64,000 nt of DNA, taken from IMG/VR virus record IMGVR_UViG_3300044641_009805, positions 124,001 to 188,000 of that record; one strand, written 5' to 3'. Each line of letters opens with the position of its first letter. Within the stretch, counting starts at the first letter, position 1. Shown in pieces: positions 6,008-63,000 of the stretch. The translations under genes and the position numbers were made by a program. The notes under the pieces are model-generated. The model searched no databases, had not been told where the DNA came from, and saw only the letters and a list, made by a program, of their open reading frames with translations.

Positions 6008-6008
6008 A

Positions 6009-10751: not shown

Positions 10752-10765
10752 ATAAGGAGACAAAT

Positions 10766-12813: not shown

Positions 12814-13637
12814 AAGATACTTTATTTCTTTTGGTCACTTGTACGAAAGATGTGACTAGATTTGAGATACTAAAACAAGTTGTTGATAATCTAGTTCATG
12901 TAATTGATAAAAAAACGTTAGATGATTTGTTGGTATTTGATAATGCTTCTTCTTACGAAGGCAGCGTAAAATTATTGACAGACAATTTTGTTAACGTTTA
13001 CCAATCAAAAACCAACATTGGACTTTGGAGCGCAATACATTGGTGCTTAAAAAATTACCAATCTTTGATGAAAAGAGACTACAAATATCTTTACATTATC
13101 GAGTCAGACTTAATTCATTCCAATGACACTCTAAAAAAATTAGAAACATGTGAATCATTTTTAGAATCTAACAGTGAAGTAGGATTTATAAGGACAGAAG
13201 AATTTTTAGTTTCACAAAGACATTTGTACGATAAAGGAAGCCCAAAAAAAGATTCAAGAAAATACGCCTGGGTAACTCAAAATAACTTTATCCAAAACAA
13301 AAGAGTAGAGTTTTTTCAGTCAGATTGTGACGGTATGTATAAATGCAATTTTTTGGCAAAACTACCAGCCCTCAGCAGAATTCAAACTATGAAAGAAGTT
13401 TTTTTAGATCTTTCTAACTTAAAAAAGTTCAATGAGACTGATTATCAAAAGTTGTACTATCAAAGATATAAAATTTCAGCTGTCTTAGACGGAGGCATAT
13501 TTCATTCTAAGTTAGGAAATGAAAATACGGATGTAGTCATCAACGGCAGCAGGAATTACAACCTTAGCATTGATTACAGACCGACTAGATCTGATTCAAT
13601 AACTGAAATTTCTTTAGACGATGTTGTTAAACTTTGA
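12810..13637 (+). CDS. Putative GT2-like glycosyltransferase
   Basis: LVFDNASS, NIGL, YIIESD. Confidence 0.65.
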   Translation: MKDTLFLLVTCTKDVTRFEILKQVVDNLVHVIDKKTLDDLLVFDNASSYEGSVKLLTDNFVNVYQSKTNIGLWSAIHWCLKNYQSLMKRDYKYLYIIESDLIHSNDTLKKLETCESFLESNSEVGFIRTEEFLVSQRHLYDKGSPKKDSRKYAWVTQNNFIQNKRVEFFQSDCDGMYKCNFLAKLPALSRIQTMKEVFLDLSNLKKFNETDYQKLYYQRYKISAVLDGGIFHSKLGNENTDVVINGSRNYNLSIDYRPTRSDSITEISLDDVVKL

Positions 13638-13662
13638 ACAGTTTTTTTCGTGAAAGTATAAT
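13634..13662 (+). promoter_or_regulatory. Sigma70-type promoter, probably leaderless
   Basis: TTGAAC-17nt-TATAAT-7nt-ATG(13670); no SD. Confidence 0.7.
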
Positions 13663-13669
13663 TTGAACG

Positions 13670-14695: not shown

Positions 14696-14696
14696 T

Positions 14697-15839
14697 ATGA
14701 ATAAACAATATCATCTTTTCAAAGTTCATATACCTGTAGAAAAAGCATTGGATCAAATCAAAAAAGTTTTTGAATCAGGATTCATAAATGAAGGAATACA
14801 AGTAACTGAATTAACGGAAAAGTTAAAGTCATATCTAAAGACTGAAAACTTGATACTGGTTAACAGCTGTACTTCAGCTTTAACAATGGCTCTACGTCTT
14901 TGTAATGTCACAAAAGATGATGAAGTTATTTCAACTTCTATGACCTGTGTAGCTACCAATACGCCAATTGACAACTTAGGCGCAAAAATAGTTTGGGCTG
15001 ATGTAGATCCTGAAAATGGAATGTTAGACCCAAACGACGTTCTTAATAAAATTACTGCAAAAACTAAAGCTGTCATTGCAGTTGCTTGGGCAGGAACCCC
15101 ACCAAGACTTCAAGAATTAAGCAAGATTTGTAAAGAAAAAAACGTTAAATTAATCTTGGATGCAGCTCATGCTTTTGGCGCATCTTACGATAACCTTCCT
15201 TTACATCATTGGTGCGATTTTGTTTGTTATAGCTTTCAAGCTATTAAACATGTCACTACAGGGGATGGCGGCGCTTTAATCAGTAAGTCTGATGAAGATT
15301 ATAAACGATCAAAATCGATGAAATGGTTTGGCCTAGATAGGGATGTAGCAAAAGACGCCTCAGGAAATTGGAAAGGCCAGCAATGGGATGTTGATATAGT
15401 TGAAGCTGGGTATAAATTTAACATGAACAACGTATCAGCAGCAATTGGATTATCGCAGATTGAATATTTCGATGAGATAATAAATTCTCACGTAAAAAAC
15501 GCTAAGTTGTATAAACAACTTTTTGAAAATGAAAAGTTTGTTTGTTCTGCTTCTATTCCTGAAGGATCTAACTCTACATTTTGGGTTTATACCATGAAAT
15601 TAAAAAATCCAAAATTAACAAGGGATCAACTATTGAAATCTTTAAATGAATTAGGAATACATGCAGGAGTGGTTCATGTTCCTAACCACGAGTATACTGC
15701 ATTTGAAAGCTTTAACACTAATTTGCCTGGTGTCGAAGAATTTTCAAAGAATCAATTTTCTTTACCTTGTGGGTGGTGGTTGGAAGAAAATGACATAATT
15801 GAGATTGCAACAAAGGTGAAAGAAATTGTCAACTGTTGA
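14697..15839 (+). CDS. DegT/DnrJ/EryC1/StrS PLP-dependent sugar aminotransferase
   Basis: NSCTSAL, DAAHAFGA, SFQAIKHVTTGDGG, GYKFNM. Confidence 0.93.
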   Translation: MNKQYHLFKVHIPVEKALDQIKKVFESGFINEGIQVTELTEKLKSYLKTENLILVNSCTSALTMALRLCNVTKDDEVISTSMTCVATNTPIDNLGAKIVWADVDPENGMLDPNDVLNKITAKTKAVIAVAWAGTPPRLQELSKICKEKNVKLILDAAHAFGASYDNLPLHHWCDFVCYSFQAIKHVTTGDGGALISKSDEDYKRSKSMKWFGLDRDVAKDASGNWKGQQWDVDIVEAGYKFNMNNVSAAIGLSQIEYFDEIINSHVKNAKLYKQLFENEKFVCSASIPEGSNSTFWVYTMKLKNPKLTRDQLLKSLNELGIHAGVVHVPNHEYTAFESFNTNLPGVEEFSKNQFSLPCGWWLEENDIIEIATKVKEIVNC

Positions 15840-16362
15840 AGCTAAAGAATTAACACATCAAAAATTCTCATTAAGAGAAGTTTGCGATGATGATCATCTT
15901 TGGTTAGTAGAACTTCATAACGATCCTGAAGTTTTGAAAAACTTAACTAATCCTCAACCTATTACTTTAGAATCTCACTTAAATTGGTGGAATTCTTTGA
16001 ATAAAGAAAAAGAAAAAAGATACGTTTTTTGTGTTAATGAAGAAAAAGTAGGATTTTGCAAAATCTATTCAATAGATCGTAATAACAAAAATTGTTTATT
16101 AGGAGCAGATATACACAAAGACTATAGAGGAAAAGGGTTAGCAAAGCACATGTGGCAATTAATGCTTCATGTTTGTTTTAATGAGTTAAGTCTACACAGG
16201 GTTTCTTTAACCACAGCATCCTATAATTTGATAGGACAAAGAGTTTACAAAAATCTAGGATTCAAAGAAGAAGGTAGACAAATTGAATCGTTGTACAGAG
16301 AAGAAAAATATCATGATTCTATATGCATGTATTTGTTAAAACAAGACTGGAATAACAAATGA
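15826..16362 (+). CDS. GNAT N-acetyltransferase (PseH/RimL-like)
   Basis: ITLESHLNWW, YRGKGLA, VYKNLGFKEEG. Confidence 0.88.
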   Translation: MSTVEAKELTHQKFSLREVCDDDHLWLVELHNDPEVLKNLTNPQPITLESHLNWWNSLNKEKEKRYVFCVNEEKVGFCKIYSIDRNNKNCLLGADIHKDYRGKGLAKHMWQLMLHVCFNELSLHRVSLTTASYNLIGQRVYKNLGFKEEGRQIESLYREEKYHDSICMYLLKQDWNNK

Positions 16363-17063
16363 AAATTTTCGTTGGAACGATGGAACATGGAGAACTAGAT
16401 TTTCAAGCTTCTAAAGAATCAATTCAAAATCAAGTTGGTTTTGAAATAACTCATCACATAGTTTCAAATCATCCAGAAAAAGAAGCTCATGAAAAATTAT
16501 TTTCCGCGTGGAATGAAGCTAAAAAAGATCATCAACTTTTCTTGAAGGTTGATGCCGATACTGTCTTGTCTCATAATGAAGTTATAAAAAACTTTGTTGA
16601 AGTTTTTGAAAGTAACTCTAGAGTAACAGGTGCGCAAGCTTGGTTACACGATTATTTGACAGACAGCTTGATATATGGACTAACTTGCTTAAAAAACACT
16701 GTCAATGTTGCAACAAAAGTTGATAAGTTGTATCCTGATCGAGCAGACACGGGTCATGATATCGTTTTACGCGGAAATCAATTACCTGAAAAGTTAATAC
16801 CTGCCGGGAAGCATTGCTGGTACTCTTCAGAATCTCAAGCATTTCATTACGGCTTTCATAGAGGTAAAAAGAACCAATCAGACATTCTTAATAAGGTCTA
16901 TTCTGCTTGGGAAAAAAACGATTTTGACAGAATCAGAGGCATGTGTCTAATGGGATTTAAGTTGTCTTTATCGTACGAAAATGTTGATTATAGAGATGAA
17001 GATTTTCAAAATGCTTTTGAAATTGCTAAGAGAACTTACTCAAAAGAAAAAGTAAAAAGATGA
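16359..17063 (+). CDS. Putative GT-A glycosyltransferase
   Basis: FLKVDADTVL (DxD motif); operon context. Confidence 0.55.
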   Translation: MKIFVGTMEHGELDFQASKESIQNQVGFEITHHIVSNHPEKEAHEKLFSAWNEAKKDHQLFLKVDADTVLSHNEVIKNFVEVFESNSRVTGAQAWLHDYLTDSLIYGLTCLKNTVNVATKVDKLYPDRADTGHDIVLRGNQLPEKLIPAGKHCWYSSESQAFHYGFHRGKKNQSDILNKVYSAWEKNDFDRIRGMCLMGFKLSLSYENVDYRDEDFQNAFEIAKRTYSKEKVKR

Positions 17064-17965
17064 AATTGCATGTATTGATTGACAACTTGTCTTACATTCA
17101 GTCTAACTGTTATCAACATCAGTTATTCAAAACTTTAAGTCAAGAGTGTGAATTGACCTTTAGCACAATTGATGACATATTGAAGAATAAAAAAATATCT
17201 TCAAACCATGATAGGATATTGTCATGTTTAAAGCTTAGGACAATAAACAACAACGTTCATACAATTAAGAGGTTTTTAGATAATAGAGAAATTTATATCT
17301 ATGAACAGGATCCTTGGGAATCTTTCAAAGATGATTCGCAATATAAGGGTTCATATCATAAGATTTATAACGAGTTGAATGTTTTATCCTTCTTAAATAC
17401 GTCGAAGTGGTGGAGCGACTTTATCAACTCTCAAGGAATAAGGTCTAAATTTGTGAAGATGTGGATGTTGCCAGAATATTGTTCTGCTGTTCCTAATTTA
17501 TCTTCACGACAAATAGATTTAGGCTTTTGTGGCCAACTACATCCTTATAGGAAAAAATTCTTTGATTATCTTAAAAGTGAAGGAATTGTTGTCGAGGTGA
17601 TGAAACCTGCTCCTTACCAAGAATTTTTGCAAAATTTGTCAAATATAAAAATCTATGTGCATAATGAGCAAGTCAATTGGCAGGTGAATGGAAAAAACAT
17701 CTCAGCAAATGCGCTGTGGATTAAAGATGTTGAGGCCGCAGCTAGAGGTTGTATAAGCATCAGAGATTATGAAGAAGAATTAGAAAATTATGTTCCTAAA
17801 AATAATATCTCTACGATAATGACTTATGATTCATTTGAGAATGCAATTGAAGTGATAAGAAGAAACTTGAAAGAAGTGAATCAACTTCAAGACAAAATAA
17901 TTGAATCAGTGAACGCAATAAAGAATGATGTTGGATGGAAAACTGTTATTAAGGCGTTAGAATAA
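17060..17965 (+). CDS. Putative GT-B (CgeB/YkvP-like) glycosyltransferase
   Basis: RQIDLGFCGQLHPYRKK ... KDVEAAARGC. Confidence 0.55.
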   Translation: MKLHVLIDNLSYIQSNCYQHQLFKTLSQECELTFSTIDDILKNKKISSNHDRILSCLKLRTINNNVHTIKRFLDNREIYIYEQDPWESFKDDSQYKGSYHKIYNELNVLSFLNTSKWWSDFINSQGIRSKFVKMWMLPEYCSAVPNLSSRQIDLGFCGQLHPYRKKFFDYLKSEGIVVEVMKPAPYQEFLQNLSNIKIYVHNEQVNWQVNGKNISANALWIKDVEAAARGCISIRDYEEELENYVPKNNISTIMTYDSFENAIEVIRRNLKEVNQLQDKIIESVNAIKNDVGWKTVIKALE

Positions 17966-17967
17966 TC

Positions 17968-17996
17968 TTGATCATTTTTTTATTTTTTCTTATAAT
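17968..17996 (+). promoter_or_regulatory. Sigma70-type promoter, probably leaderless
   Basis: TTGATC-17nt-TATAAT-6nt-ATG(18003); no SD. Confidence 0.7.
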
Positions 17997-18002
17997 CTTT
18001 GT

Positions 18003-18935
18003 ATGAAGAAACAATCTATTGCTGTTGTAGGTCAAGGGTTTGTTGGCGGCTCTCTTACTACTGTCTTTGCTGAAAGAGGATTCGACGTCTTGGTGCATGA
18101 CAAGACAGGAAAAGTCTGTACTGGAGGAAAGCAACCAACAACAACAGAAGGATTACACCCGACTAATGTAAATGAGTTCGTAAAGTCATGTGAAGCATCT
18201 GAAAACTTCTCAAAAGTGTATTTTGTGTGTCTACCGACTCCGATGTATGATGACGGATCTGCGGATCTGTCTATCGTAGAAGGTGTTCTTTCGCAATTGG
18301 CAACTTTACCTGGCGAGAGAATTGCTGTAGTAAAATCCACGGTTCCTCCTGGCTCTACTGAGAGATGGAACAAGATGTTTTCAGAACAAGGCCTTCATGT
18401 AGTTTTTAATCCAGAATTTCTCACAGAGGCCAACGCTCTAGATGACATGAGAAATCAAAATCGTATTATTCTTGGTGGCCCTCGCCCATGGATTAATACC
18501 GTGAAACAAGTTTTTCAAACAGCATTTCCAAAAGTTCCACTCATTAAAACTTCGTCAACGACAGCTGAGATGGTGAAATATGTCACTAATAACTTCCTGA
18601 CAGTTAAGGTTTCGTTTGCAAACGAGATGTATCAGGTTTGTAATGCCCTAGATAAATCCGGATTAAATGTGGATTATGATAAGGTAATTGAATATGCAAA
18701 GTATGATTCTAGGTTAGGATCAAGCCACTGGAGTGTACCTGGACCTGATGGTGACTTTGGCAGCGGGGGTCACTGTTTCCCTAAGGACATCAATGCTATG
18801 ATCGACGTTGCAAAAAATCTTGAAGTTAAACCGACTGTTCTTAAAGCTGCGTGGGAAAAGAATCTTGAGGTTAGAAAAGACAGAGATTGGGAACGTATGT
18901 CTGGCCGCGCAGTTTCTAAAAAATCCAAAGATTGA
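18003..18935 (+). CDS. UDP-glucose/GDP-mannose dehydrogenase family, short form
   Basis: VGQGFVG, CLPTP, KSTVPPGST, NPEFL, KYVTNNFL, catalytic GGHCFPKD. Confidence 0.9.
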   Translation: MKKQSIAVVGQGFVGGSLTTVFAERGFDVLVHDKTGKVCTGGKQPTTTEGLHPTNVNEFVKSCEASENFSKVYFVCLPTPMYDDGSADLSIVEGVLSQLATLPGERIAVVKSTVPPGSTERWNKMFSEQGLHVVFNPEFLTEANALDDMRNQNRIILGGPRPWINTVKQVFQTAFPKVPLIKTSSTTAEMVKYVTNNFLTVKVSFANEMYQVCNALDKSGLNVDYDKVIEYAKYDSRLGSSHWSVPGPDGDFGSGGHCFPKDINAMIDVAKNLEVKPTVLKAAWEKNLEVRKDRDWERMSGRAVSKKSKD

Positions 18936-18939
18936 ACTA

Positions 18940-18963
18940 ATAAGGTAATGTAAATTACCTTAT
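18940..18963. promoter_or_regulatory. Perfect 10-bp inverted repeat overlapping the putative promoter of the nuclease gene
   Basis: ATAAGGTAAT-gtaa-ATTACCTTAT, lying within TTGAAC-18nt-TACCTT-6nt-ATG(18968). Confidence 0.5.
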
Positions 18964-18967
18964 AACA

Positions 18968-19786
18968 ATGCAAGAAAATAATAGTTCCTTCCAAACTTTG
19001 CCTACTGGAAAACCGCATGTTTCTTTTTCTGAGGTAAAGTTATGGAAGGAATGTTCTTTTAGACATCATCTAATTCATATTAAAAAGATTGATTTGTCTA
19101 AACCTTCTCCTGTTTTAGACTTTGGAACCGCTGTCCATGCATCTTGCGAAAAATATCTGTTGACTCGAGAGATGGATCAGCAGGTCGCGTTTAGTCATCT
19201 AGACAATGCTTGGAAGAAGCATGAAGACAATCCTGATTTTTCTAAATCTGCTTTAGAGAAAGCTAAAGTTGAAGTATCTCAAATTCTATCTGAGGTTCCT
19301 GCATTTTTAGATAAAGAGTTTCCTGAATGGCAAGTCGTTGATGCAGAGCATCAACTTTATGAAGCCGTTGAAGGTCATCCTCATGCATTCAAAGGTTTTA
19401 TTGATGGAGTCATTAAAGCCAAGGGTAAAAGAGGAGAAACAGTCTATTGGATTCTCGATTGGAAAACTACTATAAGAGGGTGGTTTCGAGAAAAAAGATC
19501 AGACGACATGGTAAAAGCCCAGCTGGCTCTTTACAAAAACTATTGGTGTCAAAAAAATCCTAATGTTCCATTCAAGGATGTTAGATGCGGTTTTGTGCTT
19601 TTGAAAAAGTCAGCAAAACCAGGAGAACATTGCGAGTTATTTTCTGTTTCTCTTGGTGAGGTCCCAATTAAGAAATCTCTTAAGGTTGTTGGAAACATGT
19701 TGACCTCTGTCAAACGAGGCATTGCCATCAAAAATAGAGATGCATGCACATACTGTGAGTATAAAGGCACTGAGCATTGCACATAA
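18968..19786 (+). CDS. PD-(D/E)XK RecB/Cas4-like exonuclease with probable Fe-S cluster
   Basis: SFSEVKLWKEC, FGTAVH, KGFIDG, ILDWKT, QLALY, C-terminal CTYCEYKGTEHC. Confidence 0.88.
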   Translation: MQENNSSFQTLPTGKPHVSFSEVKLWKECSFRHHLIHIKKIDLSKPSPVLDFGTAVHASCEKYLLTREMDQQVAFSHLDNAWKKHEDNPDFSKSALEKAKVEVSQILSEVPAFLDKEFPEWQVVDAEHQLYEAVEGHPHAFKGFIDGVIKAKGKRGETVYWILDWKTTIRGWFREKRSDDMVKAQLALYKNYWCQKNPNVPFKDVRCGFVLLKKSAKPGEHCELFSVSLGEVPIKKSLKVVGNMLTSVKRGIAIKNRDACTYCEYKGTEHCT

Positions 19787-19846
19787 TTTTTTGTTAGTTT
19801 GATGAATTTTTATTACAACTTTTGAAAAGTAGGTAATATATCGTTG

Positions 19847-21091
19847 ATGCAGAAAAAGACAATATTGTTACTTTCAGATCACCCACTTTCTACGAGCGGA
19901 GTAGGAACTCAAGCTAGATGGTTGATTAATGGATTGATTTCTACAGGAAAATATAAGTTTAAGTGCTTCGGCGGTGCAATGAAGCATGAAGACTATAGAA
20001 CGATTGTAGTAAATGAAGATTTCATTATCAAACCGACTAACGGATTTGGTGACAGAAATCTTTTGCGACAAGTCCTTGCGACTGAACGACCAGACGCTCT
20101 AATGCTATTTACCGATCCTAGATTTTTTATTTGGGTTTGGGAAATGGAGGATGAAATACATCAAATATGTCCAATCGCATACAATCATCTATGGGATAAC
20201 GGTCCTTGGCCAGAATTCAATAAAGTGCTATATGAATCTACTGATTTAGTCAATTGTATAAATTGGCCCACCTATCAAATGGTTAAGGAAAGATTTCCAG
20301 AAAAAACCAACTATATTCCTCATGGAGTTCCAAAAGAAATCTATTATCCTCTACCTGAAGATAATTCTAGAAAAAACAAAGTTAAGATCTTAGGTTCCGA
20401 TAGAGCAGATCACTTTGTGGCTCTATATGTCTCTAGAAATGCTAGAAGAAAAATGCCAAGCGATATTTTAGTGTCTTGGAAGCAATTTTTAGATGCTTTG
20501 CAAGAAAAGCATGGTCATAAAAAAGCTACACTTTTGATGCATACAGATCCTCTTGATCATGAAGGTCCTAATCTTTATCATGTTATTGAGATGCTTCAAA
20601 TAGAAAATCATGTGAAATTTTCTAAGAGTAGAGTTGATTTTAATGAAATGAGAGAAGTTTATTCGGCATGTGATACAATCGTTAATAGAAGCTCTAATGA
20701 AGGATTTGGTTTACCCACTTTAGAAGCTATGATGTGTGGAAAGCCCATTATTGCTATTAAAACCGGAGGGTTAACTAGACAAGTTGAAGATCTAGAGACT
20801 GGTGAACAATATGGGATTGCATTAGAACCTGACGTTAAATCTCTGGTTGGTAATCAAATGGTACCTTTCATTTACGAAGATTTAGTTACTCATGAAAAAT
20901 TAGCAAATGCATTTTTAGAAATGTATGAATGGGGTCCTGATAAGAGAAAGCAAGTCGGAATGAGAGCATTAGAACACGCTCACAAAGACTATGATCTAAA
21001 GAAGATTGTTTCTGATTGGGATGTTTCATTGACAAAACTGATTGAAACTTGGAAAGACCAAAGAAAAGCTTGGGAGGTAAATTCTCTATGA
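19847..21091 (+). CDS. Glycosyltransferase family 4
   Basis: SGVG, IPHGV, RNARRK, EGFGLPTLEAMMCGKP. Confidence 0.92.
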   Translation: MQKKTILLLSDHPLSTSGVGTQARWLINGLISTGKYKFKCFGGAMKHEDYRTIVVNEDFIIKPTNGFGDRNLLRQVLATERPDALMLFTDPRFFIWVWEMEDEIHQICPIAYNHLWDNGPWPEFNKVLYESTDLVNCINWPTYQMVKERFPEKTNYIPHGVPKEIYYPLPEDNSRKNKVKILGSDRADHFVALYVSRNARRKMPSDILVSWKQFLDALQEKHGHKKATLLMHTDPLDHEGPNLYHVIEMLQIENHVKFSKSRVDFNEMREVYSACDTIVNRSSNEGFGLPTLEAMMCGKPIIAIKTGGLTRQVEDLETGEQYGIALEPDVKSLVGNQMVPFIYEDLVTHEKLANAFLEMYEWGPDKRKQVGMRALEHAHKDYDLKKIVSDWDVSLTKLIETWKDQRKAWEVNSL

Positions 21092-22248
21092 AAACTGTAG
21101 TTCTCAGGGGTCCTGTGATGACGCAATCTGGATACGGAGTTCATAGTAGACAGGTAGCAAAGTGGTTAATTAATCAACCTGATATTTCCGTGAAATTTAT
21201 GGCAACTCCTTGGGGAGATACTCCATGGATTTTAGATAAAGATTTTGATGATGGATTGGTCGGAAAAATAATGGAAAGAACGGTTGGTCCTGATTACAAG
21301 GCAGACGTTTCTTTTCAACTTCAGCTTCCTAATGAATGGGATCCAAAATTATCTTTAAAAAATATAGGTTTGACAGCATCAGTAGAAACAGACAAGGCTC
21401 ATCCGTCTTGGGTGACTGCTTGCAACAGCATGGATGCAGTTGTTTTTCCTTCTAATCATGCAAAAGAAAGCATTACTTCAATAGGCGAAGTAACTAAACC
21501 AGTTCACGTAATACCAGAATCTTTTTGCGAAGAAATATTAGGTAATGATCACAACTTAGATTTGTCAAAAGTTGACACTGAATTTAATTTTTTAGTGTTC
21601 GGACAACTTACGGGAAATAATCCACACAATGATCGAAAGAATATTCTGTTTACCATCAAATGGTTGTGCGAAGTTTTTAAGGATGATCCTGATGTTGGAA
21701 TAGTTCTAAAGACTAATTCAGGAAGAAATACTAAAATTGATAGAAATCTTATCATTAAGATTCTAAAAAATGTTTTATCTGAAGTTAGAAAAGGTCCATA
21801 TCCTAAATTACATCTTTTGCATGGCGAACTAAGTAATAAAGATGTAGCTGGTCTTTACACGAATCCTAAAATTAAAGCTTTGGTAACTTTGACTAGGGGA
21901 GAAGGATATGGATTACCAATTTTAGAAGCCGCCGCTTCTGGATTACCAGTCATTGCTACAAATTGGTCAGGACACTTAGATTTTTTGAAGCACACCAAAT
22001 TTACTAAGATTGATAGTAAGATCGTCCCAGTCCATCCGTCGCGCATAGATGATAAGATCTTTGTAGCAGGAGCTAAATGGGCTGAACCCCTAGAGTCAGA
22101 TTTTAAGAAAAAAATTGCAAAGTTTAGATCATCTCCTACTTTGCCTAAAGAATGGGCGTTAGAAGGAGCTAATGTGATTAAAGAGAAATATAGGTTTTCA
22201 GAAGTTGCGAAAATTTATGATGATCAATTAGGACATTTCTTAAAATGA
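21088..22248 (+). CDS. Glycosyltransferase family 4
   Basis: SGYG, DRKN, GEGYGLPILEAAASGLPVIATNWSGHLDF; GGAGG SD. Confidence 0.92.
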   Translation: MKTVVLRGPVMTQSGYGVHSRQVAKWLINQPDISVKFMATPWGDTPWILDKDFDDGLVGKIMERTVGPDYKADVSFQLQLPNEWDPKLSLKNIGLTASVETDKAHPSWVTACNSMDAVVFPSNHAKESITSIGEVTKPVHVIPESFCEEILGNDHNLDLSKVDTEFNFLVFGQLTGNNPHNDRKNILFTIKWLCEVFKDDPDVGIVLKTNSGRNTKIDRNLIIKILKNVLSEVRKGPYPKLHLLHGELSNKDVAGLYTNPKIKALVTLTRGEGYGLPILEAAASGLPVIATNWSGHLDFLKHTKFTKIDSKIVPVHPSRIDDKIFVAGAKWAEPLESDFKKKIAKFRSSPTLPKEWALEGANVIKEKYRFSEVAKIYDDQLGHFLK

Positions 22249-40422: not shown

Positions 40423-40881
40423 ATGGCTGATGTAAAATCAGATGTAGATAAAAATCTTTTCTTGATTATAAGAAATTCGTTGAACGATGCAGTTAATTTA
40501 GTTGCAAGCCCAGCTAGCTTTCAAGTCGGGTTGAGTGATTCTCCTTCTGATTTAACTTTGATGGGCAGATTTTCGTTATCATCTAAAGTCTATTATGCGA
40601 CAAGCGAGAATGGATATACCGTCAATTTAAGCAATGATGCAAGCATTGCTCTTATATCTATACCCATAAGAAACTCTGCTAAGGTGCTTTTGCCTTCTGG
40701 CCCTCGTGAAGGTCAAATAATCTTTATTAAGGATAGAGAAGGAATATGCTCTTCGGCACCAATGGTTATATCTGCATCTGAAAGTTTAATTGATGGAGCT
40801 TCTTCGATTGCTATAACTTCAGACTATGGTAAGAAGTGTCTGTGCTGGAATACTGACAGGTGGTCTGTCATCTCTGATTGA
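40423..40881 (+). CDS. Small virion protein with a gp9/gp10-like fibre-connector domain
   Basis: LLPSGPREGQIIFIKD...IDG...Y...W pattern. Confidence 0.55.
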   Translation: MADVKSDVDKNLFLIIRNSLNDAVNLVASPASFQVGLSDSPSDLTLMGRFSLSSKVYYATSENGYTVNLSNDASIALISIPIRNSAKVLLPSGPREGQIIFIKDREGICSSAPMVISASESLIDGASSIAITSDYGKKCLCWNTDRWSVISD

Positions 40882-41019
40882 TTCTATTGTTATCAGCTGC
40901 AACTGAAGTTCATCAATCGTAGTTAAATTTTCTGCTTCTTTATGTTCTTTTTTTGTTGGGGTGATTGTTTCCTCTACGAACAAACCGTCTGATGATTCAT
41001 ATAAGTTTATTGAGATCAT
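40819..41019 (-). CDS. Small acidic hypothetical protein
   Basis: Preceded on the minus strand by ATACTTAT (late-promoter-like) and AAGGGGA SD; convergent overlap with 40423..40881. Confidence 0.5.
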   Translation of the reverse strand: MISINLYESSDGLFVEETITPTKKEHKEAENLTTIDELQLQLITIESIRDDRPPVSIPAQTLLTIV

Positions 41020-41043
41020 AAAGTTCCCCTTTTTATATAAGTA

Positions 41044-41553
41044 TCAATTTAATTCACACTGCAAGTTTTTCTTTACGATATCTTCGATAGTTTCATTATC
41101 TTGGAATAAATCAGCAAATTCAAACTGTTCATCTTCTTCAGATAAAGTTTGTATTTTTATTCCTTCTCTAACACCATCGATTAGTCTCAAATGATCGCTC
41201 AATATCCACCCAAAGTGAATCGAGATCAGTGATCCATCATTGGTTTTTTTTGCAGCAGATGCAGCTTTTATTAATCTTAAGAATGTAGTAGAAACGTGCT
41301 TGTTGTCAATGTAATCGATGTGGCACCCGTTCCATTCGACTTCTAACCATTGTCCTCTTTTCAAGGTGATGACTTCAACCTCTGGATGGGTTTTCAATAA
41401 GTTGTTTAAATTTTTCTTTGAAGATTTTTTGACTAAATTGTGAAGGACTGTCGATTCTGGAAACAAATAGAAATATTTTGTCTTTGTTTCGTTATCAGGT
41501 AACGTAATTTTGTGCTTTTTCATTTCATTCTTTGAAATTCTAACACAAATCAA
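41044..41553 (-). CDS. Hypothetical protein
   Basis: 169-aa ORF; TAAACT 6 nt before the TTG start. Confidence 0.6.
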   Translation of the reverse strand: MICVRISKNEMKKHKITLPDNETKTKYFYLFPESTVLHNLVKKSSKKNLNNLLKTHPEVEVITLKRGQWLEVEWNGCHIDYIDNKHVSTTFLRLIKAASAAKKTNDGSLISIHFGWILSDHLRLIDGVREGIKIQTLSEEDEQFEFADLFQDNETIEDIVKKNLQCELN

Positions 41554-41572
41554 TGCAATAGTTTATTCTAAT

Positions 41573-41935
41573 TTAAATGGGTTTTAACTTACTAACAATC
41601 TTTTCAATTAATTTTGTATTGTCAGGTCCTAATGCTACACACACTAATTCGTTACCCTTTGTATTAGAGTGAGCCTCTATTCCCATGAACTCCGCTCGAT
41701 TTAAAATATCATGTAGTTGTTCTTCGGAATCTACCCCTAAGATAATTTGCGAAAAAGACCCAGTTAGCCATGAAACTTCGTCATTCGAGAGATTGACAAA
41801 AACCTGATCTGGTCTGGCGGCTTCATTATTTTCTATTAAAAACTTTACGGAAGCTGCGGCAACTTGTGAAGCGATTTCTCCTCTTCTCATGTTTAGATCG
41901 TTGCGTACCACTATGAATTGTTTTACATCTTCCAT
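41573..41935 (-). CDS. Peptidyl-tRNA hydrolase type 2 (Pth2)-like protein, degenerate active site
   Basis: KQFIVVRNDLNMRRGEIASQVAAA, IILGVDSEEQL, CVALGP; GAGGTG SD before the ATG at 41935. Confidence 0.8.
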   Translation of the reverse strand: MEDVKQFIVVRNDLNMRRGEIASQVAAASVKFLIENNEAARPDQVFVNLSNDEVSWLTGSFSQIILGVDSEEQLHDILNRAEFMGIEAHSNTKGNELVCVALGPDNTKLIEKIVSKLKPI

Positions 41936-41960
41936 TGTAACACCTCGTAAACAAGCCACG

Positions 41961-42464
41961 TCATTCTTCTTGATCATCTTGAAGAATTTCTTTTCTTACT
42001 TCCTCCAATATTTTACCAAGCCAGTTTTCTCCTACACCTCCTACTGTTCCCCAAAATCTATCGTTCCACCGATTTTCATTAATCAGTGGTCTGTTATCTG
42101 TTCCTTTTAATCTACAACGAATAAAAGGATTTTCAAACTTTTTTCTTATCAAATCCTTCATGATAGAGATTTTTTCTTCTTTCCAATCTTCTCTAACAAT
42201 GACAGATTGTCCCAATCTTTTAGCAAGATTGGGATTTTCAGCTTTTCTTATTAGTTCCCTCGTTTCTTGATTCAAGCTTTTTGCAGCTTGATATGCATGC
42301 TCAACAGAGGGATATAACTTTCCTTCAAAAGTTATCGACGAATTATAAAAATTAGAAAGGAACTCAAATCCATTTTTTTTAGAAAATCCTACAATCGGAT
42401 TACTCTCTTCTCTTAAATTCTTTGGATTTTCTAAGTCCTTTTGCATATAAATTTGATAATGCAA
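41961..42464 (-). CDS. NADAR (YbiA/DUF1768) family protein; start codon uncertain
   Basis: FLSNFY, YPSVEHAYQAAK, AKRLG, REDW, KKF, NDRFWG, GENWLGKILEEVR. Confidence 0.9.
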   Translation of the reverse strand: MHYQIYMQKDLENPKNLREESNPIVGFSKKNGFEFLSNFYNSSITFEGKLYPSVEHAYQAAKSLNQETRELIRKAENPNLAKRLGQSVIVREDWKEEKISIMKDLIRKKFENPFIRCRLKGTDNRPLINENRWNDRFWGTVGGVGENWLGKILEEVRKEILQDDQEE

Positions 42465-42936
42465 TTGAGTAATCTTCTTGATTCGATCTATAATAATTAC
42501 ATCTTTTCAACGAAAGAGACGCCTCTTTAGGATTGCCTGATCTAAAATTTTTCAAAGCGATTGAACATCTTGACATGAATCTCCAATACTCTTCTCCGCC
42601 CGTTACGAAGTTTTTATGAGATCTATATTTCGCTTTCCCAAAATGACTATAATACGGACCGGGAGTACCAGCAGGTAAATTTCCTATATTACCTAAATTA
42701 TGATTCCAGATTTTACGACCATGTTGGTTTTCCAACGCAATATGTGACCATGCACCTGCTAGCAAATTTTCATGCGGCAAGTTTCCGTAGACATTTACAT
42801 AAGATTCATTTAAAATTTTTACAAGATCATCGCTATCGATCGGCGTAAGTTTTCTCTCTACTTTACATTCTTTTGCTGGAAAAGCTAGAATGGAAAAAGA
42901 GATTATCAAATTCATAAAAATCGTCGCGTTAATCAT
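42400..42936 (-). CDS. Secreted glucosaminidase-like peptidoglycan hydrolase (GH73/FlgJ-like)
   Basis: N-terminal signal-like segment; SHIALENQHG, NHNLGNI, KYRSH, LKRCNYY..NQEDY. Confidence 0.65.
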   Translation of the reverse strand: MINATIFMNLIISFSILAFPAKECKVERKLTPIDSDDLVKILNESYVNVYGNLPHENLLAGAWSHIALENQHGRKIWNHNLGNIGNLPAGTPGPYYSHFGKAKYRSHKNFVTGGEEYWRFMSRCSIALKNFRSGNPKEASLSLKRCNYYRSNQEDYSIALSNLYAKGLRKSKEFKRRE

Positions 42937-43108
42937 AGATTGTAATTATACAATGTAATACAAAAGTATACATAAATGGAATTTCATTAATTTGTGTGGT
43001 CGTGTATTTGTGCGGGTAGATAAATACTGAAAGTATGGTTTTGTGTATTTAACGTTTTCCGGAATGTCATACATTTGATGATACGTGCCTGGAGCATTAA
43101 GAATTTAA

Positions 43109-44866
43109 ATGTCAACAAACGACAAGAATAGATTTAGAAAAACTTATTCTTTTTTTAGACAGCAACCCATCTTTGCTTCAGGCGGTGGGGGCGGCGGCGG
43201 TGGTGGGGGTAATGGAGATCAATTTTGGTATTCTACCACCAATGATTCGATCTATACTACTGGGTCAGTTATAATTCGAGGAGATGAAACGGGGTTAGAC
43301 TCTCCTTTTGATGTTGGATCTGACGTATTTTTCTATGTCAGCGGTTCTATAGACGCCATTAATCCTAATGACAGCAAAGTGGCAGTTTTTGGTGGAGATC
43401 TTGTTGTCAGTGGTGCCTTTTTACTAGAAAGCGATTATCTTGAAATAACTGGCACGTTGGTCGTTACAGAAGGTGTCAGCGGATCCATTACAAAACTTGC
43501 TGATGGCACTTCTTATCTTGTAGCAGGTAGTAACATTACGATAACTTCTCAATCTAATGGATCTATTGTAATCTCTTCAACTGGTGGTGGTGGATCTTCA
43601 ATTAACTTTTTTGATTCTACGACTGCCGGATCAGTTTACACGACGGGATCATTTGCCTTTAGAGGTCAAGAGCTAATAGATTCTCCTTCTGACGTTGGAA
43701 CTGACGTCTTCTTTTTTGTCAGCGGTTCTACGGGCGCGGTCAGCAATCAAAAATCTCTTTTTGGAGGTGACGTAGTCGTAAGCGGTTCTTTCTTTGCGGA
43801 AGGCGACCGCCTAGAGATGACAGGAACTATCCTGGCGACTTCAGGGTTTAGCGGTTCGTTAACAAAACTCACTGATGGTACGTCTTATTTAGTCGCAGGA
43901 AACAATGTTAACATCGTTTCACAGTCCAATGGATCGATAGTAATATCTTCAACAGGTGGCGGAGGAGATAGCTTCTTTTCCTCAACGACGGCTGGTTCAA
44001 TTTATACAACGGGGTCAGCTGCATTCAGGGGTCAAGAATCTATAGATTCTCCAATAGACAAAGGTACGGACGTATTCTTTTATGTCAGCGGTTCCAAAGG
44101 TTCTCGAGACACGTCCGTAGCAGGCTCTTCGCTATTTGGAGGAGATGTAATAGTCAGCGGATCGACTTACATGTTGTCGGGTGCCATTGTACAAAATGGT
44201 CTCAGGGTCACAGGATCGTTAGATGTCGAAGGAGACATCGTCGACATATCTGGCTCTCTCATCGTCACGGGTTCCACTTACCTATCTGGTACTTTATTCC
44301 TTACGGGATCTATGTTTTCTGAAATGGGCAGCATTACAGCTGTTCAAGGATTCAGCGGATCATTAACAAAGTTGGCAGATGGAACTTCATACCTGGTGGC
44401 AGGAAACAATGTTAACATTGTTTCGCAGTCCAATGGTTCTATTGTGATCTCTTCTACGGGAGGAGGATCAAGCACAGTAAATCTCCAGTTCCTTGCTGGC
44501 ACGGTTTCTTCAGCAGCGCCGTCAGGGTCTATGGAATCGATCGGGATGGATTATCTGAATCTTTCAGCATTACCACCGGTTCCAACAAACTACACATTCT
44601 CAGCAATTTTAGCTACAACAGTTGGCACGACTGCATACATGGATCTTTACGATTACAATGGAATATTCAGCGGCGGTTCTCCTGGGCCCATATCCGGATC
44701 GGTGTTGACAGGATCGAGTCAGTCTTATACTTACCTAACAGCAAACTTGACGACTGCGATGTCTTCTCCTTCTGGCAACGGAATAATAGAAGCGAGGATA
44801 TGGTGCGATCCGACTGGATCAAATTTGAACGCAATATGTAAGTCAGCTAAACTGACGATAAGTTAA
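43109..44866 (+). CDS. Tail/head fibre-like protein with three internal repeats
   Basis: Three copies of STTxGSxYTTGS...DVFFxVSGS...FGGDxxVSG...SGSxTKLxDGTSYLVAG...SQSNGSIVISSTGGG; poly-Gly linker. Confidence 0.75.
   Translation: MSTNDKNRFRKTYSFFRQQPIFASGGGGGGGGGGNGDQFWYSTTNDSIYTTGSVIIRGDETGLDSPFDVGSDVFFYVSGSIDAINPNDSKVAVFGGDLVVSGAFLLESDYLEITGTLVVTEGVSGSITKLADGTSYLVAGSNITITSQSNGSIVISSTGGGGSSINFFDSTTAGSVYTTGSFAFRGQELIDSPSDVGTDVFFFVSGSTGAVSNQKSLFGGDVVVSGSFFAEGDRLEMTGTILATSGFSGSLTKLTDGTSYLVAGNNVNIVSQSNGSIVISSTGGGGDSFFSSTTAGSIYTTGSAAFRGQESIDSPIDKGTDVFFYVSGSKGSRDTSVAGSSLFGGDVIVSGSTYMLSGAIVQNGLRVTGSLDVEGDIVDISGSLIVTGSTYLSGTLFLTGSMFSEMGSITAVQGFSGSLTKLADGTSYLVAGNNVNIVSQSNGSIVISSTGGGSSTVNLQFLAGTVSSAAPSGSMESIGMDYLNLSALPPVPTNYTFSAILATTVGTTAYMDLYDYNGIFSGGSPGPISGSVLTGSSQSYTYLTANLTTAMSSPSGNGIIEARIWCDPTGSNLNAICKSAKLTIS
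43220..44470 (+). repeat. Three imperfect intragenic repeats of about 125-165 codons
   Basis: Protein-level repeats above; DNA shares e.g. gcaggaaacaatgttaacat. Confidence 0.8.
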
Positions 44867-60010: not shown

Positions 60011-63000
60011 ATGGCTAAATTCGAATTTTCAAGCGCAGGAATATCAGCACAAGAGATCGGGACGATTGGTCCTGTCAAGACCCAACCGAGTGGTCTTTCG
60101 GCTGGCGTCATTGGAACTTCAAATAACGGTCCCGCTTTCGTTCCCTTTACGTTAGGATCTCTCACTGATTTTATCGACAAGTTTGGGACCATCGACGGCA
60201 AAAAGTTTGGTCCCCTTGCGGTCGCAGAGTGGATGAGAAATGCAAACTCTATCACCTACATTCGCATCCTCGGAGCAGGCGACGGAAATAAACGCCTGAC
60301 GTCTGGCGAGGTCACCAACGCAGGTTTCACTGTCGGAGAAGAACAACCTATCAACTCTAGTTCCTTAGGGTCCAATCCATATGCAAATCTCAATGGTCCT
60401 CTAGGCAGGACTTACTTTTTGGGATGCTTCATGTCAGAATCTGCAGGATCAGTCGTGTTCAGTTCGGCTGGGCTGCAAGGAACAGGCAGCATCAATGGGA
60501 TAACGGCAGGAGCCGTTCCCATCATCAGAGGAGTTCTGATGGCACCTTCGGGGGTGATCTTACGTTTATCTTCATCAGGAGGAGGATACGATTCATCGGC
60601 TCCCTTATCAAACTTTGTAGCCGATGAATCAACGGCTCACGGTACGACTTTAGGCTCCATCTCGCTTAGAAAAGATCAAACGCCATCACAGGAATTCGTT
60701 CTGCTGATGAATGGTCACAAAGGCACGACCTCAGCTCCTAATTTCATCACGGCTTCCTTCGATATGTTCTCCACCAACTACATATCGAACGTATTCAATC
60801 TCACGGCTTCATTGATACAAGAAAAAGGTCACTACCTTGCAGCTCATTGGGACATCTACCCCTCTCACGCTGTCGTGACTGGTACGGGAGTCGTATCTGC
60901 TGGCGCCGACGTGGCTTCAGATTCAAATAGAATACTAGACACTGAGAGATCAGTCTTTTTGATCACGTCTTCGTTGTCTAGAAACGTTGGATCGACGACG
61001 GTCCCAAATTATGAATCTTTCAGAGATCGATTCACTCACGCATCCACGCCTTGGATAATTTCTCAAAAACTTTTAGGAAAGCACGAAAATCTTTTCAAGC
61101 TCCATGCCCTTGACGCGGGGGCGAACGTATCCAACAGCTACAAGGTGACAATTCATGACGTACGTCCTAAGTCAGAAGGAAGTCCATACAAGTACGGTTC
61201 GTTCAGCCTGTCTGTGAGGTTGATAGATGATCCAGATAACGAAGACTCTAAACCGCTTGAAACCTTCAACGACCTGACGCTGGATCCATCTTCTGCCACT
61301 TACATCTGTAAAGTGATAGGAGACGTAAACGTCTACTACGATTTTGACAGACCTCCTGACGACCAAAGGATGGTGATCGAAGGCAATTATCCCTTAAAGT
61401 CTAGATACGTTAGAGTTGAAGTATCTGAAGAGGTTCATAACGCTACTCTGAATCCTGCGGCCATCCCGATGGGGTCCCGAGGAATTTCACACATAGTTAC
61501 TTCCGGCTCGGCTCCGCTAGCTCCATTGGGCGGCTCGGATATTCTACCTCTGGTCGATCAATACTACCTGCGAAATTCCGTGGTTCCTCCTCTACCAATG
61601 AGGCTAAACAACAAGGCAGCAGGTAACAACACGGACCCCCCGACGAAGAAGCCTTGGGGACCTATATTCGTTCACTCAAGTCCATTCGACTCGAACGATT
61701 TGCCAAACTCAAATCTCAATAAATCTTTCAACGCTTTTGCGCTTCACTATCCTGACCACTCGACGACAACTCTAAACTTTTCCGTGAGAGACAACGAGGG
61801 AACGCCCGACTCTACCACGAATGGGATATTGGACGCCGATAGGTTCTGTAACAACCTATTCACTTTAGAAAATGTCAAGGTGTTGACCGGTAGCAGCGGA
61901 ATCATCGAGTGGGGCTCTGCCGAGTATGTTCGTCACGGCTTCGTCGCGGTCGATGATGATGCAAAGACACGAGGGATCAACGTCTCTGATCTTCTATTGA
62001 AGAAAAACAGAGACTATCTAAGCTTTAATGTGATGTTCCAAGGAGGATTCGACGGGATCAACATCTTCGACTCTGATGAAGCTGCCATCAATGACGTCGC
62101 CGTCAGAGGAGACATGGAGGACATTGCACGAGGCGGATTGAACGGTTCAGCCGTGGTCTCTCACAGAAAAGCGATAGACATCATCAAGAACACAGTCAAT
62201 GCGGACATCGGCGTCATGGCCATCCCTGGAATAAGAGAACGCGTGATCACTGACGTCGCCGTGCAGGCGGCGGAAGAAAGAATGGACACTCTCTATATCA
62301 TGGACATAGAACAGTACGATTCAGGCTCAAATCCCATGTCCATGTCGGCTCTAGGCAAGTCCAACGCACCCTCAACGTCATTGACCATTGCGGCTCTTAA
62401 AGAACGCGGCGTGAACTCATCCTATGCAGCCGCATACTACCCCGACGTGATAATAACCCCTGATCAATTGCCTGATCAGGAGATAATCGTCCCACCCTCC
62501 GTGGCCGTCCTCGGCGCCATCTCACTCAATGACTCTGTCGGAGCTCCATGGTTCGCTCCCGCCGGCATGACCCGAGGCCGTCTCACAACGGCCCTACAAC
62601 CCGTGATCAACTTCGACGAACCCACGATCGATAACCTGTACATCAACAACATAAATCCACTCTACGCGACGACAAACATAAAACAACTATCCCCAGCCCA
62701 AACGTCAGGCGTCGTCATCTGGGGTCAAAAGACGCTGCTGCTATCGACAGAATCTTCTCTAGGCAGAATAGCCGTCCGCAGGCTTCTCATCGACGTACGC
62801 AAGGCCGTCAGACAAATCGCGCTACAATTCCTCTTTGAACCAAACGTAGAGAGAGTGTCAACCGTCTTCGCCTCACAGATCACAGAATACCTGTCGTCCG
62901 TCCGCGCCCGCAACGGCCTCCAATCCTTCAAGGTGAACATAGAATCACCCCTAAAATCTAGACAAAACGTCGAAAACAACTTGCTCAAGGGCAAAATCTA

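What the first reader, a model, noticed from the sequence alone, without database searches (positions are those of the whole stretch)
41573..41935. Pth2 homologue with its catalytic residues removed
Seen: the family motif GKxAAQxxH reads GEIASQVAA (Lys to Glu, His to Ala), and the DAGxT loop is absent (EAHSNTKGNELVCVALGP). The rest of the fold pattern and a good SD are retained. Known: that Lys and the Asp/Thr of DAGxT are needed for Pth2 activity. Inference: a repurposed pseudo-enzyme, e.g. a tRNA-binding, decoy or anti-defence protein.
Basis: partly seen in the sequence, partly recalled or inferred. Interest (0 to 1): 0.6.

Follow-up and report, generated by a model that had tools for sequence, protein, structure and literature searches.

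The report
Catalytically dead phage Pth2 homologue
A 278-kb jumbo phage carries a peptidyl-tRNA hydrolase (Pth2) look-alike that keeps the enzyme's fold but has lost its whole active site, and a whole clade of related phages keeps this version under strong selection, so it probably does a job other than hydrolysis.

Summary
The minus-strand gene at 41573-41935 (120 aa) is a true PTH2-family protein. Pfam PF01981 scores E 2e-17. The AlphaFold model has pLDDT 95 and matches S. solfataricus Pth2 at Z 18.4.

The catalytic Lys is Glu, the motif His is Ala, and the strand-loop carrying Asp-x-Gly-x-Thr is replaced by a tight turn (an 8-column gap). About 15 positions that are invariant in active phage Pth2 proteins are lost.

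This copy is not drifting:
- At least 28 distinct homologues from many metagenomes share the loss.
- They form one clade (support 97/92) nested inside canonical phage Pth2.
- dN/dS is 0.02-0.05, tighter than the neighbouring genes.
- It is the only Pth2 gene found in each of the six genomes checked.

Lys and His were lost stepwise after the loop. Selection now preserves the fold core and a lineage-specific polar segment (residues 31-60) that predates the loss.

Best reading: a hydrolase-dead pseudoenzyme that keeps a binding role. Yeast Pth2 D174A, which is inactive as a hydrolase yet still performs a second function, is a precedent. The partner is unknown. An intact NADAR gene always sits immediately upstream, but this is lineage synteny, and the complex prediction gave no verdict. 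This is a new variant of a known kind. Public databases annotate these proteins as active hydrolases.

The parts
41573..41935 (-). CDS of the Pth2-like protein (120 aa plus stop; P0001). Gene callers that use the upstream ATG at 41977 give a 134-aa form, which overlaps the end of the NADAR gene.
   Evidence: ORF list, translation, Pfam PTH2 E 2.3e-17. All 15 close homologues start at the position of Met at 41935.
41941..41946 (-). Shine-Dalgarno-like GAGGTG, 5 nt upstream of the ATG at 41935
   Evidence: Read directly from the sequence.
41855..41881 (-). Degenerate N-terminal helix motif, residues 19-27 (GEIASQVAA). It stands in place of G-K-x-A-A-Q-x-x-H. The Glu20 codon is 41876-41878 and the Ala27 codon is 41855-41857.
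   Evidence: HMMER alignment to solved Pth2 structures. Column statistics: Lys is 97-100% and His 97-100% conserved in canonical phage Pth2, and both are lost in the degenerate clade.
41624..41677 (-). Shortened beta-hairpin, residues 87-104. A tight Lys93-Gly94 turn (41654-41659) replaces the D-x-G-x-T-E-F active-site loop, an 8-column gap against canonical phage Pth2.
   Evidence: Alignments. The model shows strands 88-93 and 96-106 joined by a two-residue turn at pLDDT above 90.
41756..41845 (-). Residues 31-60, a lineage-specific conserved polar segment (F32, N36, N37, E38, R41, V47, L49, S50, E53, W56). It is invariant or nearly so in the degenerate clade and is shared with the canonical sister clade. 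It is the candidate for the retained functional surface.
   Evidence: Column conservation in three groups and invariant columns in A1. That it forms a surface or binding site is inference.
41961..42464 (-). NADAR-domain gene immediately upstream on the same strand. Its family motifs look intact. Its stop lies 25 nt before the Pth2-like start.
   Evidence: Pfam NADAR E 3.8e-23, phrog_1017 E 1.7e-37, alignment A3. It is directly upstream in every degenerate-clade locus recovered.
41044..41523 (-). Conserved downstream gene of unknown function (ORF169 family). Homologues start at the internal Met, giving about 159 aa.
   Evidence: jackhmmer found it in 32 loci. Alignment A4. Model pLDDT 86. No clear fold match: best VIA Z 5.3, to SH3b-like cell-wall-binding repeats.
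42400..42936 (-). First gene of the four-gene minus-strand cassette (178 aa, hydrophobic N-terminus, no family hit)
   Evidence: ORF list. No Pfam, PHROG, NCBIfam or PADLOC hit. Homologues in 15 loci.

Best explanation
The gene encodes a pseudoenzyme. It descends from the peptidyl-tRNA hydrolase (Pth2) that many large phages carry. It keeps the compact Pth2 alpha/beta fold but no longer hydrolyses peptidyl-tRNA, because the catalytic Lys, the Asp-x-Gly-x-Thr loop and the rest of the conserved pocket are gone.

In one lineage of uncultured jumbo phages this dead version replaced the enzyme. It is the only Pth2 copy found in each genome checked, and it has since been kept under very strong purifying selection.

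Selection now preserves the fold core and a polar, lineage-specific segment (residues 31-60: F32, N36, N37, E38, R41, S50, E53, W56). This segment already existed in the still-active sister proteins. The most likely mechanism is therefore that the ancestral phage Pth2 had two roles, catalysis and binding of a partner through this second surface, and that only the binding role survives. The partner could be tRNA or a ribosome-associated component, or a phage or host protein.

Shown: the loss of residues, the retained fold, a single origin with stepwise decay, purifying selection, and single copy. Inferred: absence of activity, that the conserved segment is a binding surface, and the identity of the partner.
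For: - Family and fold: Pfam PTH2; pLDDT 95; Z 18.4 to 1xty.
- Active-site loss: searches show about 15 positions lost that are 97-100% conserved in 50 canonical phage Pth2 proteins (M16, G19, K20, H27, K63, D93, G, T, E, F, T96, T98, D111, T114, G115).
- The wider family almost never loses them: 118 of 120 representatives keep K-Q-H-D-G-T.
- The Asp is required: yeast Pth2 D174A is hydrolase-inactive yet still performs a separable second function (PMC9892010). S. solfataricus K18/D86/T90 being catalytic (Fromant et al. 2005) is from my own knowledge.
- One clade of 28 sequences, support 97/92, is nested in canonical forms. The G-x-T loop was lost at the base. Lys and His are still present in L029/L030/L032, Lys alone in P0017, and both are lost elsewhere.
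- dN/dS: 0.030 (49 synonymous against 10 non-synonymous changes), 0.027, 0.046, 0.044 and 0.023 in five pairs. NADAR gives 0.06-0.13 and ORF169 0.05-0.12 in the same genome pairs. Canonical sister Pth2 gives 0.05-0.15.
- One PTH2 hit per genome in six records of 65-278 kb. The own genome has no Pth1 and no RF-1-domain hydrolase.
- The NCBIfam Pth2 equivalog models score below cut-off: 57.6 against 126, and 53.1 against 82.
Against: - No activity or binding was measured.
- The genomes are 20-84% complete, so an intact Pth elsewhere cannot be excluded.
- The binding-surface idea rests on sequence conservation alone. I could not inspect coordinates.
- The segment could be conserved for folding rather than for binding.
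- Within the shallow deletion subclade, Glu20, Glu87 and His89 are conserved. This leaves room for a rebuilt catalytic site there.
Confidence: 0.6

Rival explanations
1. It is still an enzyme. The Pth2 fold was re-tooled, with relocated residues, to hydrolyse a different ester. One candidate is an ADP-ribose-linked or other ribose-ester substrate, acting in series with the adjacent NADAR enzyme, which removes ADP-ribose from bases or processes ADP-ribose derivatives.
For: An intact NADAR gene lies directly upstream in every degenerate-clade locus. Glu20, Glu87 and His89 are conserved within the deletion subclade. Selection is very strong, as expected for an enzyme.
Against: Across the whole degenerate clade no polar residue is conserved at or around the old pocket. 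Site 20 is E/D/Q/T/R/K, site 27 is A/G/K/Q/R/T, and site 89 alternates His and Tyr. The NADAR linkage predates the loss: it is also present within 4 kb in canonical sister loci, separated there by a homing endonuclease and other insertions, and it is mostly absent from more distant phages. That pattern is lineage synteny and not independent co-occurrence.
Confidence: 0.15
2. It is a non-catalytic subunit or regulator of a neighbouring gene product (NADAR upstream, or the ORF169-family protein downstream) and forms a stable complex with it.
For: The order NADAR, Pth2-like, ORF169 is invariant and tightly packed in all degenerate-clade loci. The intergenic gaps are about 20-50 nt.
Against: The complex prediction for NADAR plus the Pth2-like protein scored ipSAE 0.00-0.01. 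The tool rates this as no verdict, so it is not evidence against binding, but it gives no support. The synteny is confined to one phage lineage. ORF169 was not tested.
Confidence: 0.12
3. It is a substrate-trap or decoy in the arms race with the host. It would bind tRNA 3' ends or peptidyl-tRNA without cleaving them, or mimic Pth2 to distract a host defence. These are the first reader's specific examples.
For: The phage invests in translation: the genome has 14 tRNA genes. Canonical phage Pth2 is proposed to act in tRNA and ribosome rescue during conflicts (PMC7824862). The gene lies in a small opposite-strand accessory cassette between structural genes.
Against: The pocket that would hold the CCA-peptidyl end is neither conserved nor basic any more: K20 and K63 are lost, and pI is about 5. 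There is no PADLOC or anti-defence family hit. No host or defence system is known for this phage.
Confidence: 0.1
4. It is a decaying remnant with no function, a pseudogene in the making.
For: The catalytic residues are lost. An unrelated single case (L081, with K to E plus a 4-residue loop deletion) has no conserved relatives and could be such a remnant.
Against: The frame stays open across at least 28 distinct sequences at 44-73% identity (per-sequence identities). Thirty-one columns are invariant among the 16 nearest. dN/dS is 0.02-0.05, lower than for the neighbouring genes. The model is confident and compact.
Confidence: 0.02

Closest known systems
Archaeal/eukaryotic peptidyl-tRNA hydrolase 2 (Pth2; PDB 1xty, 2zv3, 3erj, 1wn2, 1rlk, human Bit1/PTRH2 1q7s)
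   Same: Same Pfam family (PF01981). Same four-strand, four-helix fold (Z 17-18, rmsd 1.6-1.9 A). Same length class. The N-terminal K-x-x-I-V-V-R-x-D-L strand and the C-terminal G-P-D and L-K elements are retained.
   Different: It lacks the catalytic Lys, the motif His, and the Asp, Gly and Thr of the beta3-beta4 loop (8-column gap), together with about 10 further pocket positions. It scores below both NCBIfam Pth2 equivalog cut-offs.
Canonical Pth2 of jumbo and other large phages (phrog_1866; described in Iyer et al. 2021, PMC7824862; annotated in Atu_ph07, XacN1, phiM12, and mycobacteriophages Myrna and Baka)
   Same: Direct evolutionary ancestor: the degenerate clade nests inside these proteins. 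It shares the lineage-specific N-N-E...R...E..W segment with the nearest canonical sisters, and it shares synteny with NADAR and the ORF169 family.
   Different: The canonical proteins keep K-Q-H-D-G-T without exception in 48 of 50 loci examined and in 118 of 120 wider representatives. The window's clade has lost all of these residues except the Gln, which about half the clade, the window copy included, still keeps.
Yeast Pth2, with its hydrolase-independent role (UBL-domain binding and removal of non-imported mitochondrial precursors)
   Same: A precedent that the Pth2 fold can carry a second, non-catalytic binding function. That function survives loss of the catalytic Asp: D174A is hydrolase-inactive but still rescues one phenotype (PMC9892010).
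   Different: In yeast the two functions coexist in one active enzyme. In the phage, the catalytic half has been discarded by evolution. No ubiquitin-like partner is known in this phage. The equivalence of yeast D174 with the missing loop Asp is from my own knowledge of the motif and was not aligned here.
Atu0240 / DUF2000-type Pth2-like fold proteins (PDB 2gax)
   Same: Bacterial proteins with a Pth2-like fold and no assigned activity. This is the next-best structural match (Z 11.7).
   Different: Only 18% identity. It is a different family, is not matched by sequence, and is not the origin of this gene.

Membership tests
PTH2 family (Pfam PF01981): homology | Significant full-length match to the family profile, above the gathering cut-off | tested here: met
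   63.7 bits against a cut-off of 23, E 2.3e-17, profile positions 1-113 of 115. phrog_1866 E 9.9e-18.
PTH2 family (Pfam PF01981): homology | Pth2 alpha/beta fold | tested here: met
   Predicted model pLDDT 95.1. Z 18.4, rmsd 1.9 A over 111 residues to 1xty. TM 0.80-0.85. The structure is predicted, not solved.
Functional peptidyl-tRNA hydrolase Pth2 (enzyme, equivalog level) | Score above the NCBIfam equivalog cut-offs (NF003314, TIGR00283) | tested here: not met
   57.6 against 126 bits, and 53.1 against 82 bits.
Functional peptidyl-tRNA hydrolase Pth2 (enzyme, equivalog level) | Catalytic Lys at the N-terminus of helix 1 (S. solfataricus K18) | tested here: not met
   Glu20 aligns with it. 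Lys is 97-100% conserved in canonical phage Pth2.
Functional peptidyl-tRNA hydrolase Pth2 (enzyme, equivalog level) | Asp and Thr of the D-x-G-x-T loop (S. solfataricus D86/T90; yeast D174) | tested here: not met
   The loop is absent: a 7-8 column gap, with a Lys93-Gly94 turn in its place. D174A abolishes hydrolase activity in yeast.
Functional peptidyl-tRNA hydrolase Pth2 (enzyme, equivalog level) | Conserved His of G-K-x-A-A-Q-x-x-H | tested here: not met
   Ala27.
Functional peptidyl-tRNA hydrolase Pth2 (enzyme, equivalog level) | Hydrolysis of peptidyl- or N-acyl-aminoacyl-tRNA | not testable with these tools
   Needs an enzyme assay or pth(ts) complementation.
Pseudoenzyme (catalytically dead homologue retained by selection) | Clear homology to an active enzyme family together with loss of residues required for catalysis | tested here: met
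Pseudoenzyme (catalytically dead homologue retained by selection) | Maintained by purifying selection across a clade, not as a lone decaying copy | tested here: met
   One clade of 28 sequences. dN/dS 0.02-0.05.
Pseudoenzyme (catalytically dead homologue retained by selection) | Demonstrated lack of the ancestral activity, and a demonstrated new role | not testable with these tools
   Biochemistry and genetics are required.

The most novel reading that the evidence does not exclude
The dead Pth2 is a dedicated conflict protein. One version: it is a binder that neutralises or decoys a host immunity component that acts on, or senses, the tRNA 3' end or Pth2 itself. The other version: together with the always-adjacent NADAR, it forms a two-part system that recognises and reverses ADP-ribosylation (or another ribose-linked modification) of RNA. 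In that case the Pth2 shell would serve as the RNA or ribose recognition module.
Probability: 0.15. Interest if true: 0.8.

Novelty: new variant of a known kind. Interest (0 to 1): 0.5.

Why it matters
Pth2 in jumbo phages has been read as a translation-rescue enzyme (PMC7824862). Here a whole phage lineage has thrown away the chemistry and kept the protein under tighter constraint than its neighbours. That implies phage Pth2 proteins have a second, selectable, non-catalytic function, as yeast Pth2 does. It also supplies a natural separation-of-function allele with which to find that function.

There is a practical consequence as well. Public resources label these proteins 'peptidyl-tRNA hydrolase' or 'PTH2 family peptidyl-tRNA hydrolase', which is probably wrong for this clade. 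Counts of 'translation genes' in huge phages inherit that error.

Tried and rejected
- Complex prediction of NADAR with the Pth2-like protein: ipSAE 0.00 and 0.01, which the tool rates as no verdict. I do not use it as evidence either way.
- Nearest cultured phage through a large structural protein: no match in the phage collection. Host and taxon remain unknown.
- Promoter and terminator scan of 40800-43200: no more sites than in shuffles.
- A second hydrolase that might have replaced the lost activity: no Pth1 and no RF-1/ArfB-type domain in the 278-kb record, which is 84% complete.
- A change of net charge as a clue to lost tRNA binding: no difference. The degenerate and canonical sister clades are both acidic, pI about 5.1.
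- ESM Atlas look-alikes outside PF01981, for the Pth2-like protein and for ORF169: only sub-threshold hits to unnamed viral clusters.
- ORF169 fold: Foldseek found nothing at E of 0.001 or better. The best VIA Z is 5.3, to SH3b-like repeats, below the level at which such matches mean anything.
- Genes lying between NADAR and Pth2 in canonical sister loci, as possible lost partners: a GIY-YIG/NUMOD3 homing endonuclease, a Phi_1-domain protein, a SPASM-domain protein and unknowns. None is an obvious partner.
- L081 as a second, convergent dead clade: rejected. It has one near-identical relative and then only canonical proteins at 54% identity or less.
- No claim here rests on an absence of relatives.

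Full report
**What is there**

The window is bases 124001-188000 of a 278-kb viral record, classed as linear and about 84% complete. It is a jumbo phage with no close cultured relative and 14 tRNA genes elsewhere in the genome.

The finding lies in a four-gene cassette on the minus strand (41044-42936). The cassette sits between large plus-strand genes, most with no family match, that look like tail or fibre genes. In transcription order the cassette is:
- a 178-aa protein with a hydrophobic N-terminus;
- a NADAR-domain protein (Pfam E 3.8e-23);
- the Pth2-like protein;
- a conserved protein of about 159 aa with unknown function.

The Pth2-like CDS is 41573-41935 (120 aa, P0001). All close homologues begin at this Met, and GAGGTG lies 5 nt upstream. 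The 134-aa form from the ATG at 41977 is a gene-caller extension.

**Checking the observation**

The protein matches Pfam PTH2 over the full length of the profile (E 2.3e-17, 63.7 bits against a cut-off of 23). It also matches the phage family phrog_1866.

HMMER alignments to solved archaeal Pth2 proteins show three things:
- Glu20 stands opposite the second Lys of G-K-G-K (K18 in S. solfataricus 1xty numbering).
- Ala27 stands opposite the motif His.
- A 7-residue gap sits where the end of strand 3 and D-A-G-x-T lie.

The AlphaFold2 model, built on a 78-sequence alignment, is very confident (pLDDT 95.1). It shows strands 88-93 and 96-106 joined by a two-residue turn, so the active-site loop has been excised cleanly and not disordered. 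The model superposes on S. solfataricus Pth2 at Z 18.4, rmsd 1.9 A over 111 residues, and on five other Pth2 structures at Z 16.8-18.1 (Foldseek TM 0.80-0.85).

**Is this copy drifting, or is it a conserved variant?**

A word search found 15 further clusters at 47-73% identity. Fourteen of them share Glu at site 20, and the 13 nearest share the deletion. A scan of IMG/VR returned 80 loci.

In the joint alignment, canonical phage Pth2 proteins read R-K-D-L-N-M-R-K-G-K-I-A-A-Q-V-A-H-A ... D-x-G-x-T-E-F ... P-T-x-T-C-x-A-x-G-P. Of 50 canonical sequences, 48 keep all of K-Q-H-D-G-T. In an independent set of 120 cluster representatives of the wider group, 118 keep all six.

All degenerate sequences (28 distinct rows) form one clade with support 97/92. 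The clade is nested within canonical proteins, and a fully canonical sequence (L005) is its immediate outgroup.

The decay was stepwise:
- Every member lacks the Gly and Thr of the loop.
- One sub-branch (L029/L030/L032) still has Lys, His and Asp.
- P0017 has only Lys.
- The rest have lost everything.
- The window's subclade has in addition deleted the loop.

At the former pocket positions the clade is variable. Site 20 is E/D/Q/T/R/K and site 27 is A/G/K/Q/R/T. In all, about 15 positions that are 97-100% conserved in active proteins are lost.

**Selection**

I computed Nei-Gojobori estimates on closely related pairs inside the degenerate clade:

| Pair | dN/dS | Note |
|---|---|---|
| L083/L084 | 0.030 | 49 synonymous, 10 non-synonymous differences |
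| L085/L087 | 0.044 | |
| L009/L012 | 0.027 | |
| L007/L010 | 0.046 | |
| L029/L030 | 0.023 | |

In the same genome pairs the neighbouring NADAR gene gives 0.06-0.13 and ORF169 gives 0.05-0.12. Canonical sister Pth2 pairs give 0.05-0.15. The dead protein is therefore at least as constrained as the live enzyme and more constrained than its neighbours. The internal branches leading into the clade are long (0.24-0.32 substitutions per site), which is consistent with a burst of change followed by renewed constraint.

The degenerate gene is the only PTH2 match in the own genome and in five related records of 65-213 kb. The own genome has no Pth1 and no RF-1-domain hydrolase. These records are incomplete, so absence is provisional.

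**What is still conserved**

Three kinds of position stay conserved:
- The fold core: K5, Q6, I8, R11, D13, W56, C99, G103, P104, L117, K118.
- A polar segment between helix 1 and strand 2: F32, N36, N37, E38, R41, V47, L49, S50, E53. These are 96-100% conserved in the degenerate clade.
- The same polar segment is present in the 13 nearest canonical proteins (N37 and E53 at 100%, N36 and E38 at 85%). In more distant phage Pth2 proteins the region is variable, with insertions of up to 30 residues.

The segment therefore predates the loss of catalysis and is specific to this phage lineage. I infer that it marks a second functional surface that the ancestor already used. I could not inspect coordinates, so this is inference from sequence only.

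**Mechanism**

The best-supported reading is a pseudoenzyme that has kept the non-catalytic half of a formerly bifunctional protein.

Evidence that the residues matter: yeast Pth2 D174A is hydrolase-inactive (PMC9892010). From my own knowledge, K18, D86 and T90 were identified as active-site residues of S. solfataricus Pth2 by Fromant et al. 2005.

Evidence that the fold can carry a separable binding function: the same D174A mutant still rescues the import-quality-control phenotype, and yeast Pth2 binds UBL domains (cited in PMC13023423).

The partner of the phage protein is unknown. The variable and no longer basic pocket (K20 and K63 lost) argues against a simple trap for the peptidyl-CCA end.

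**The NADAR neighbour**

An apparently intact NADAR gene lies directly upstream in every degenerate-clade locus, 20-40 nt from the Pth2-like start. Its conserved motifs are visible in alignment A3.

NADAR is also within 4 kb of the canonical sister genes. There it is separated by a homing endonuclease and other variable insertions. It is found near only 2 of 37 distant canonical genes. The linkage is thus synteny within one lineage and is weak evidence for a shared function. A complex prediction gave no verdict. I keep a functional link to NADAR as a rival and as the novel case, and I do not count it as a finding.

**Comparison with what is known, and novelty**

Pth2 in jumbo phages is known and has been interpreted as a ribosome and tRNA rescue enzyme (PMC7824862). 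My literature searches found no description of a conserved, catalytically dead phage Pth2 clade, though the library is incomplete.

The protein is a member of the PTH2 homology family (profile and fold tests met). It fails every testable criterion for the enzyme: the equivalog cut-offs, Lys, His, Asp and Thr. It should not be filed as a peptidyl-tRNA hydrolase, although databases do so. I rate it a new variant of a known kind and of moderate interest. The evolutionary case is clean and gives a natural separation-of-function allele, but the function remains open.

**Limits**

- All sequences are metagenomic.
- There are no expression, host or biochemical data.
- The structure is predicted.
- dS is near saturation for several pairs, so dN/dS values are approximate, though all are far below 1.

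Table 11 was used throughout, and nothing suggested another genetic code.

Noticed in passing
window 41961-42464 (-): NADAR-domain gene with conserved family motifs. It also gives a sub-threshold match to the NCBIfam model 'NADAR family anti-phage protein' (47.7 against 240 bits) and to PADLOC PDC-M42C (E 4e-8). A phage NADAR could reverse host ADP-ribosylation; this was not tested.
   Followed up: partly
window 41044-41523 (-): ORF169 family: conserved in 32 related loci, with invariant E-x-E-W-x-G, R and G-W motifs. No family hit. Confident model (pLDDT 86) without a clear PDB match. The best weak matches are SH3b-like cell-wall-binding repeats (Z 5.3), plus a weak GroES profile hit (E 0.0075).
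   Followed up: partly
window 42400-42936 (-): 178-aa protein with a hydrophobic N-terminal segment (possibly a signal peptide or membrane anchor). Conserved in 15 related loci. No hit in any family library.
   Followed up: partly
window 43109-44866 (+): 585-aa protein that begins with a run of 11 Gly. It contains at least three internal repeats of about 130-150 aa, each ending in S-N-G-S-I-V-I-S-S-T-G-G-G. There is a weak CBM_X2 hit. It looks like a repetitive fibre or adhesin.
   Followed up: no
G000:C1:52059-53806, 62143-62217 and 82717-82789 (outside the window): Fourteen tRNA genes, twelve of them in one 1.7-kb cluster on the minus strand. The phage invests in translation although its Pth2 is dead.
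   Followed up: partly
L081:4001-4366: An independent case in a distant phage Pth2 lineage: Lys to Glu at the same site plus a 4-residue deletion in the G-x-T loop. It has only one near-identical relative, so it may be a recent inactivation and not a second conserved clade.
   Followed up: yes
L018:2005-2700: A GIY-YIG/NUMOD3 homing endonuclease is inserted between NADAR and canonical Pth2 in a sister phage. This shows that the region is a hotspot for mobile insertions.
   Followed up: partly
window 2542-22248 (+): About twenty consecutive, often overlapping plus-strand ORFs of 230-420 aa, many with TTG or GTG starts, in a region of 30-35% G+C. This is lower than the 44-48% G+C at the 3' end of the window. 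Not examined.
   Followed up: no
window 41936-41977 (-): Public gene calls (P0002, 134 aa) start the Pth2-like gene at an upstream ATG that overlaps the NADAR stop. The homologues and the Shine-Dalgarno position favour the 120-aa form.
   Followed up: yes
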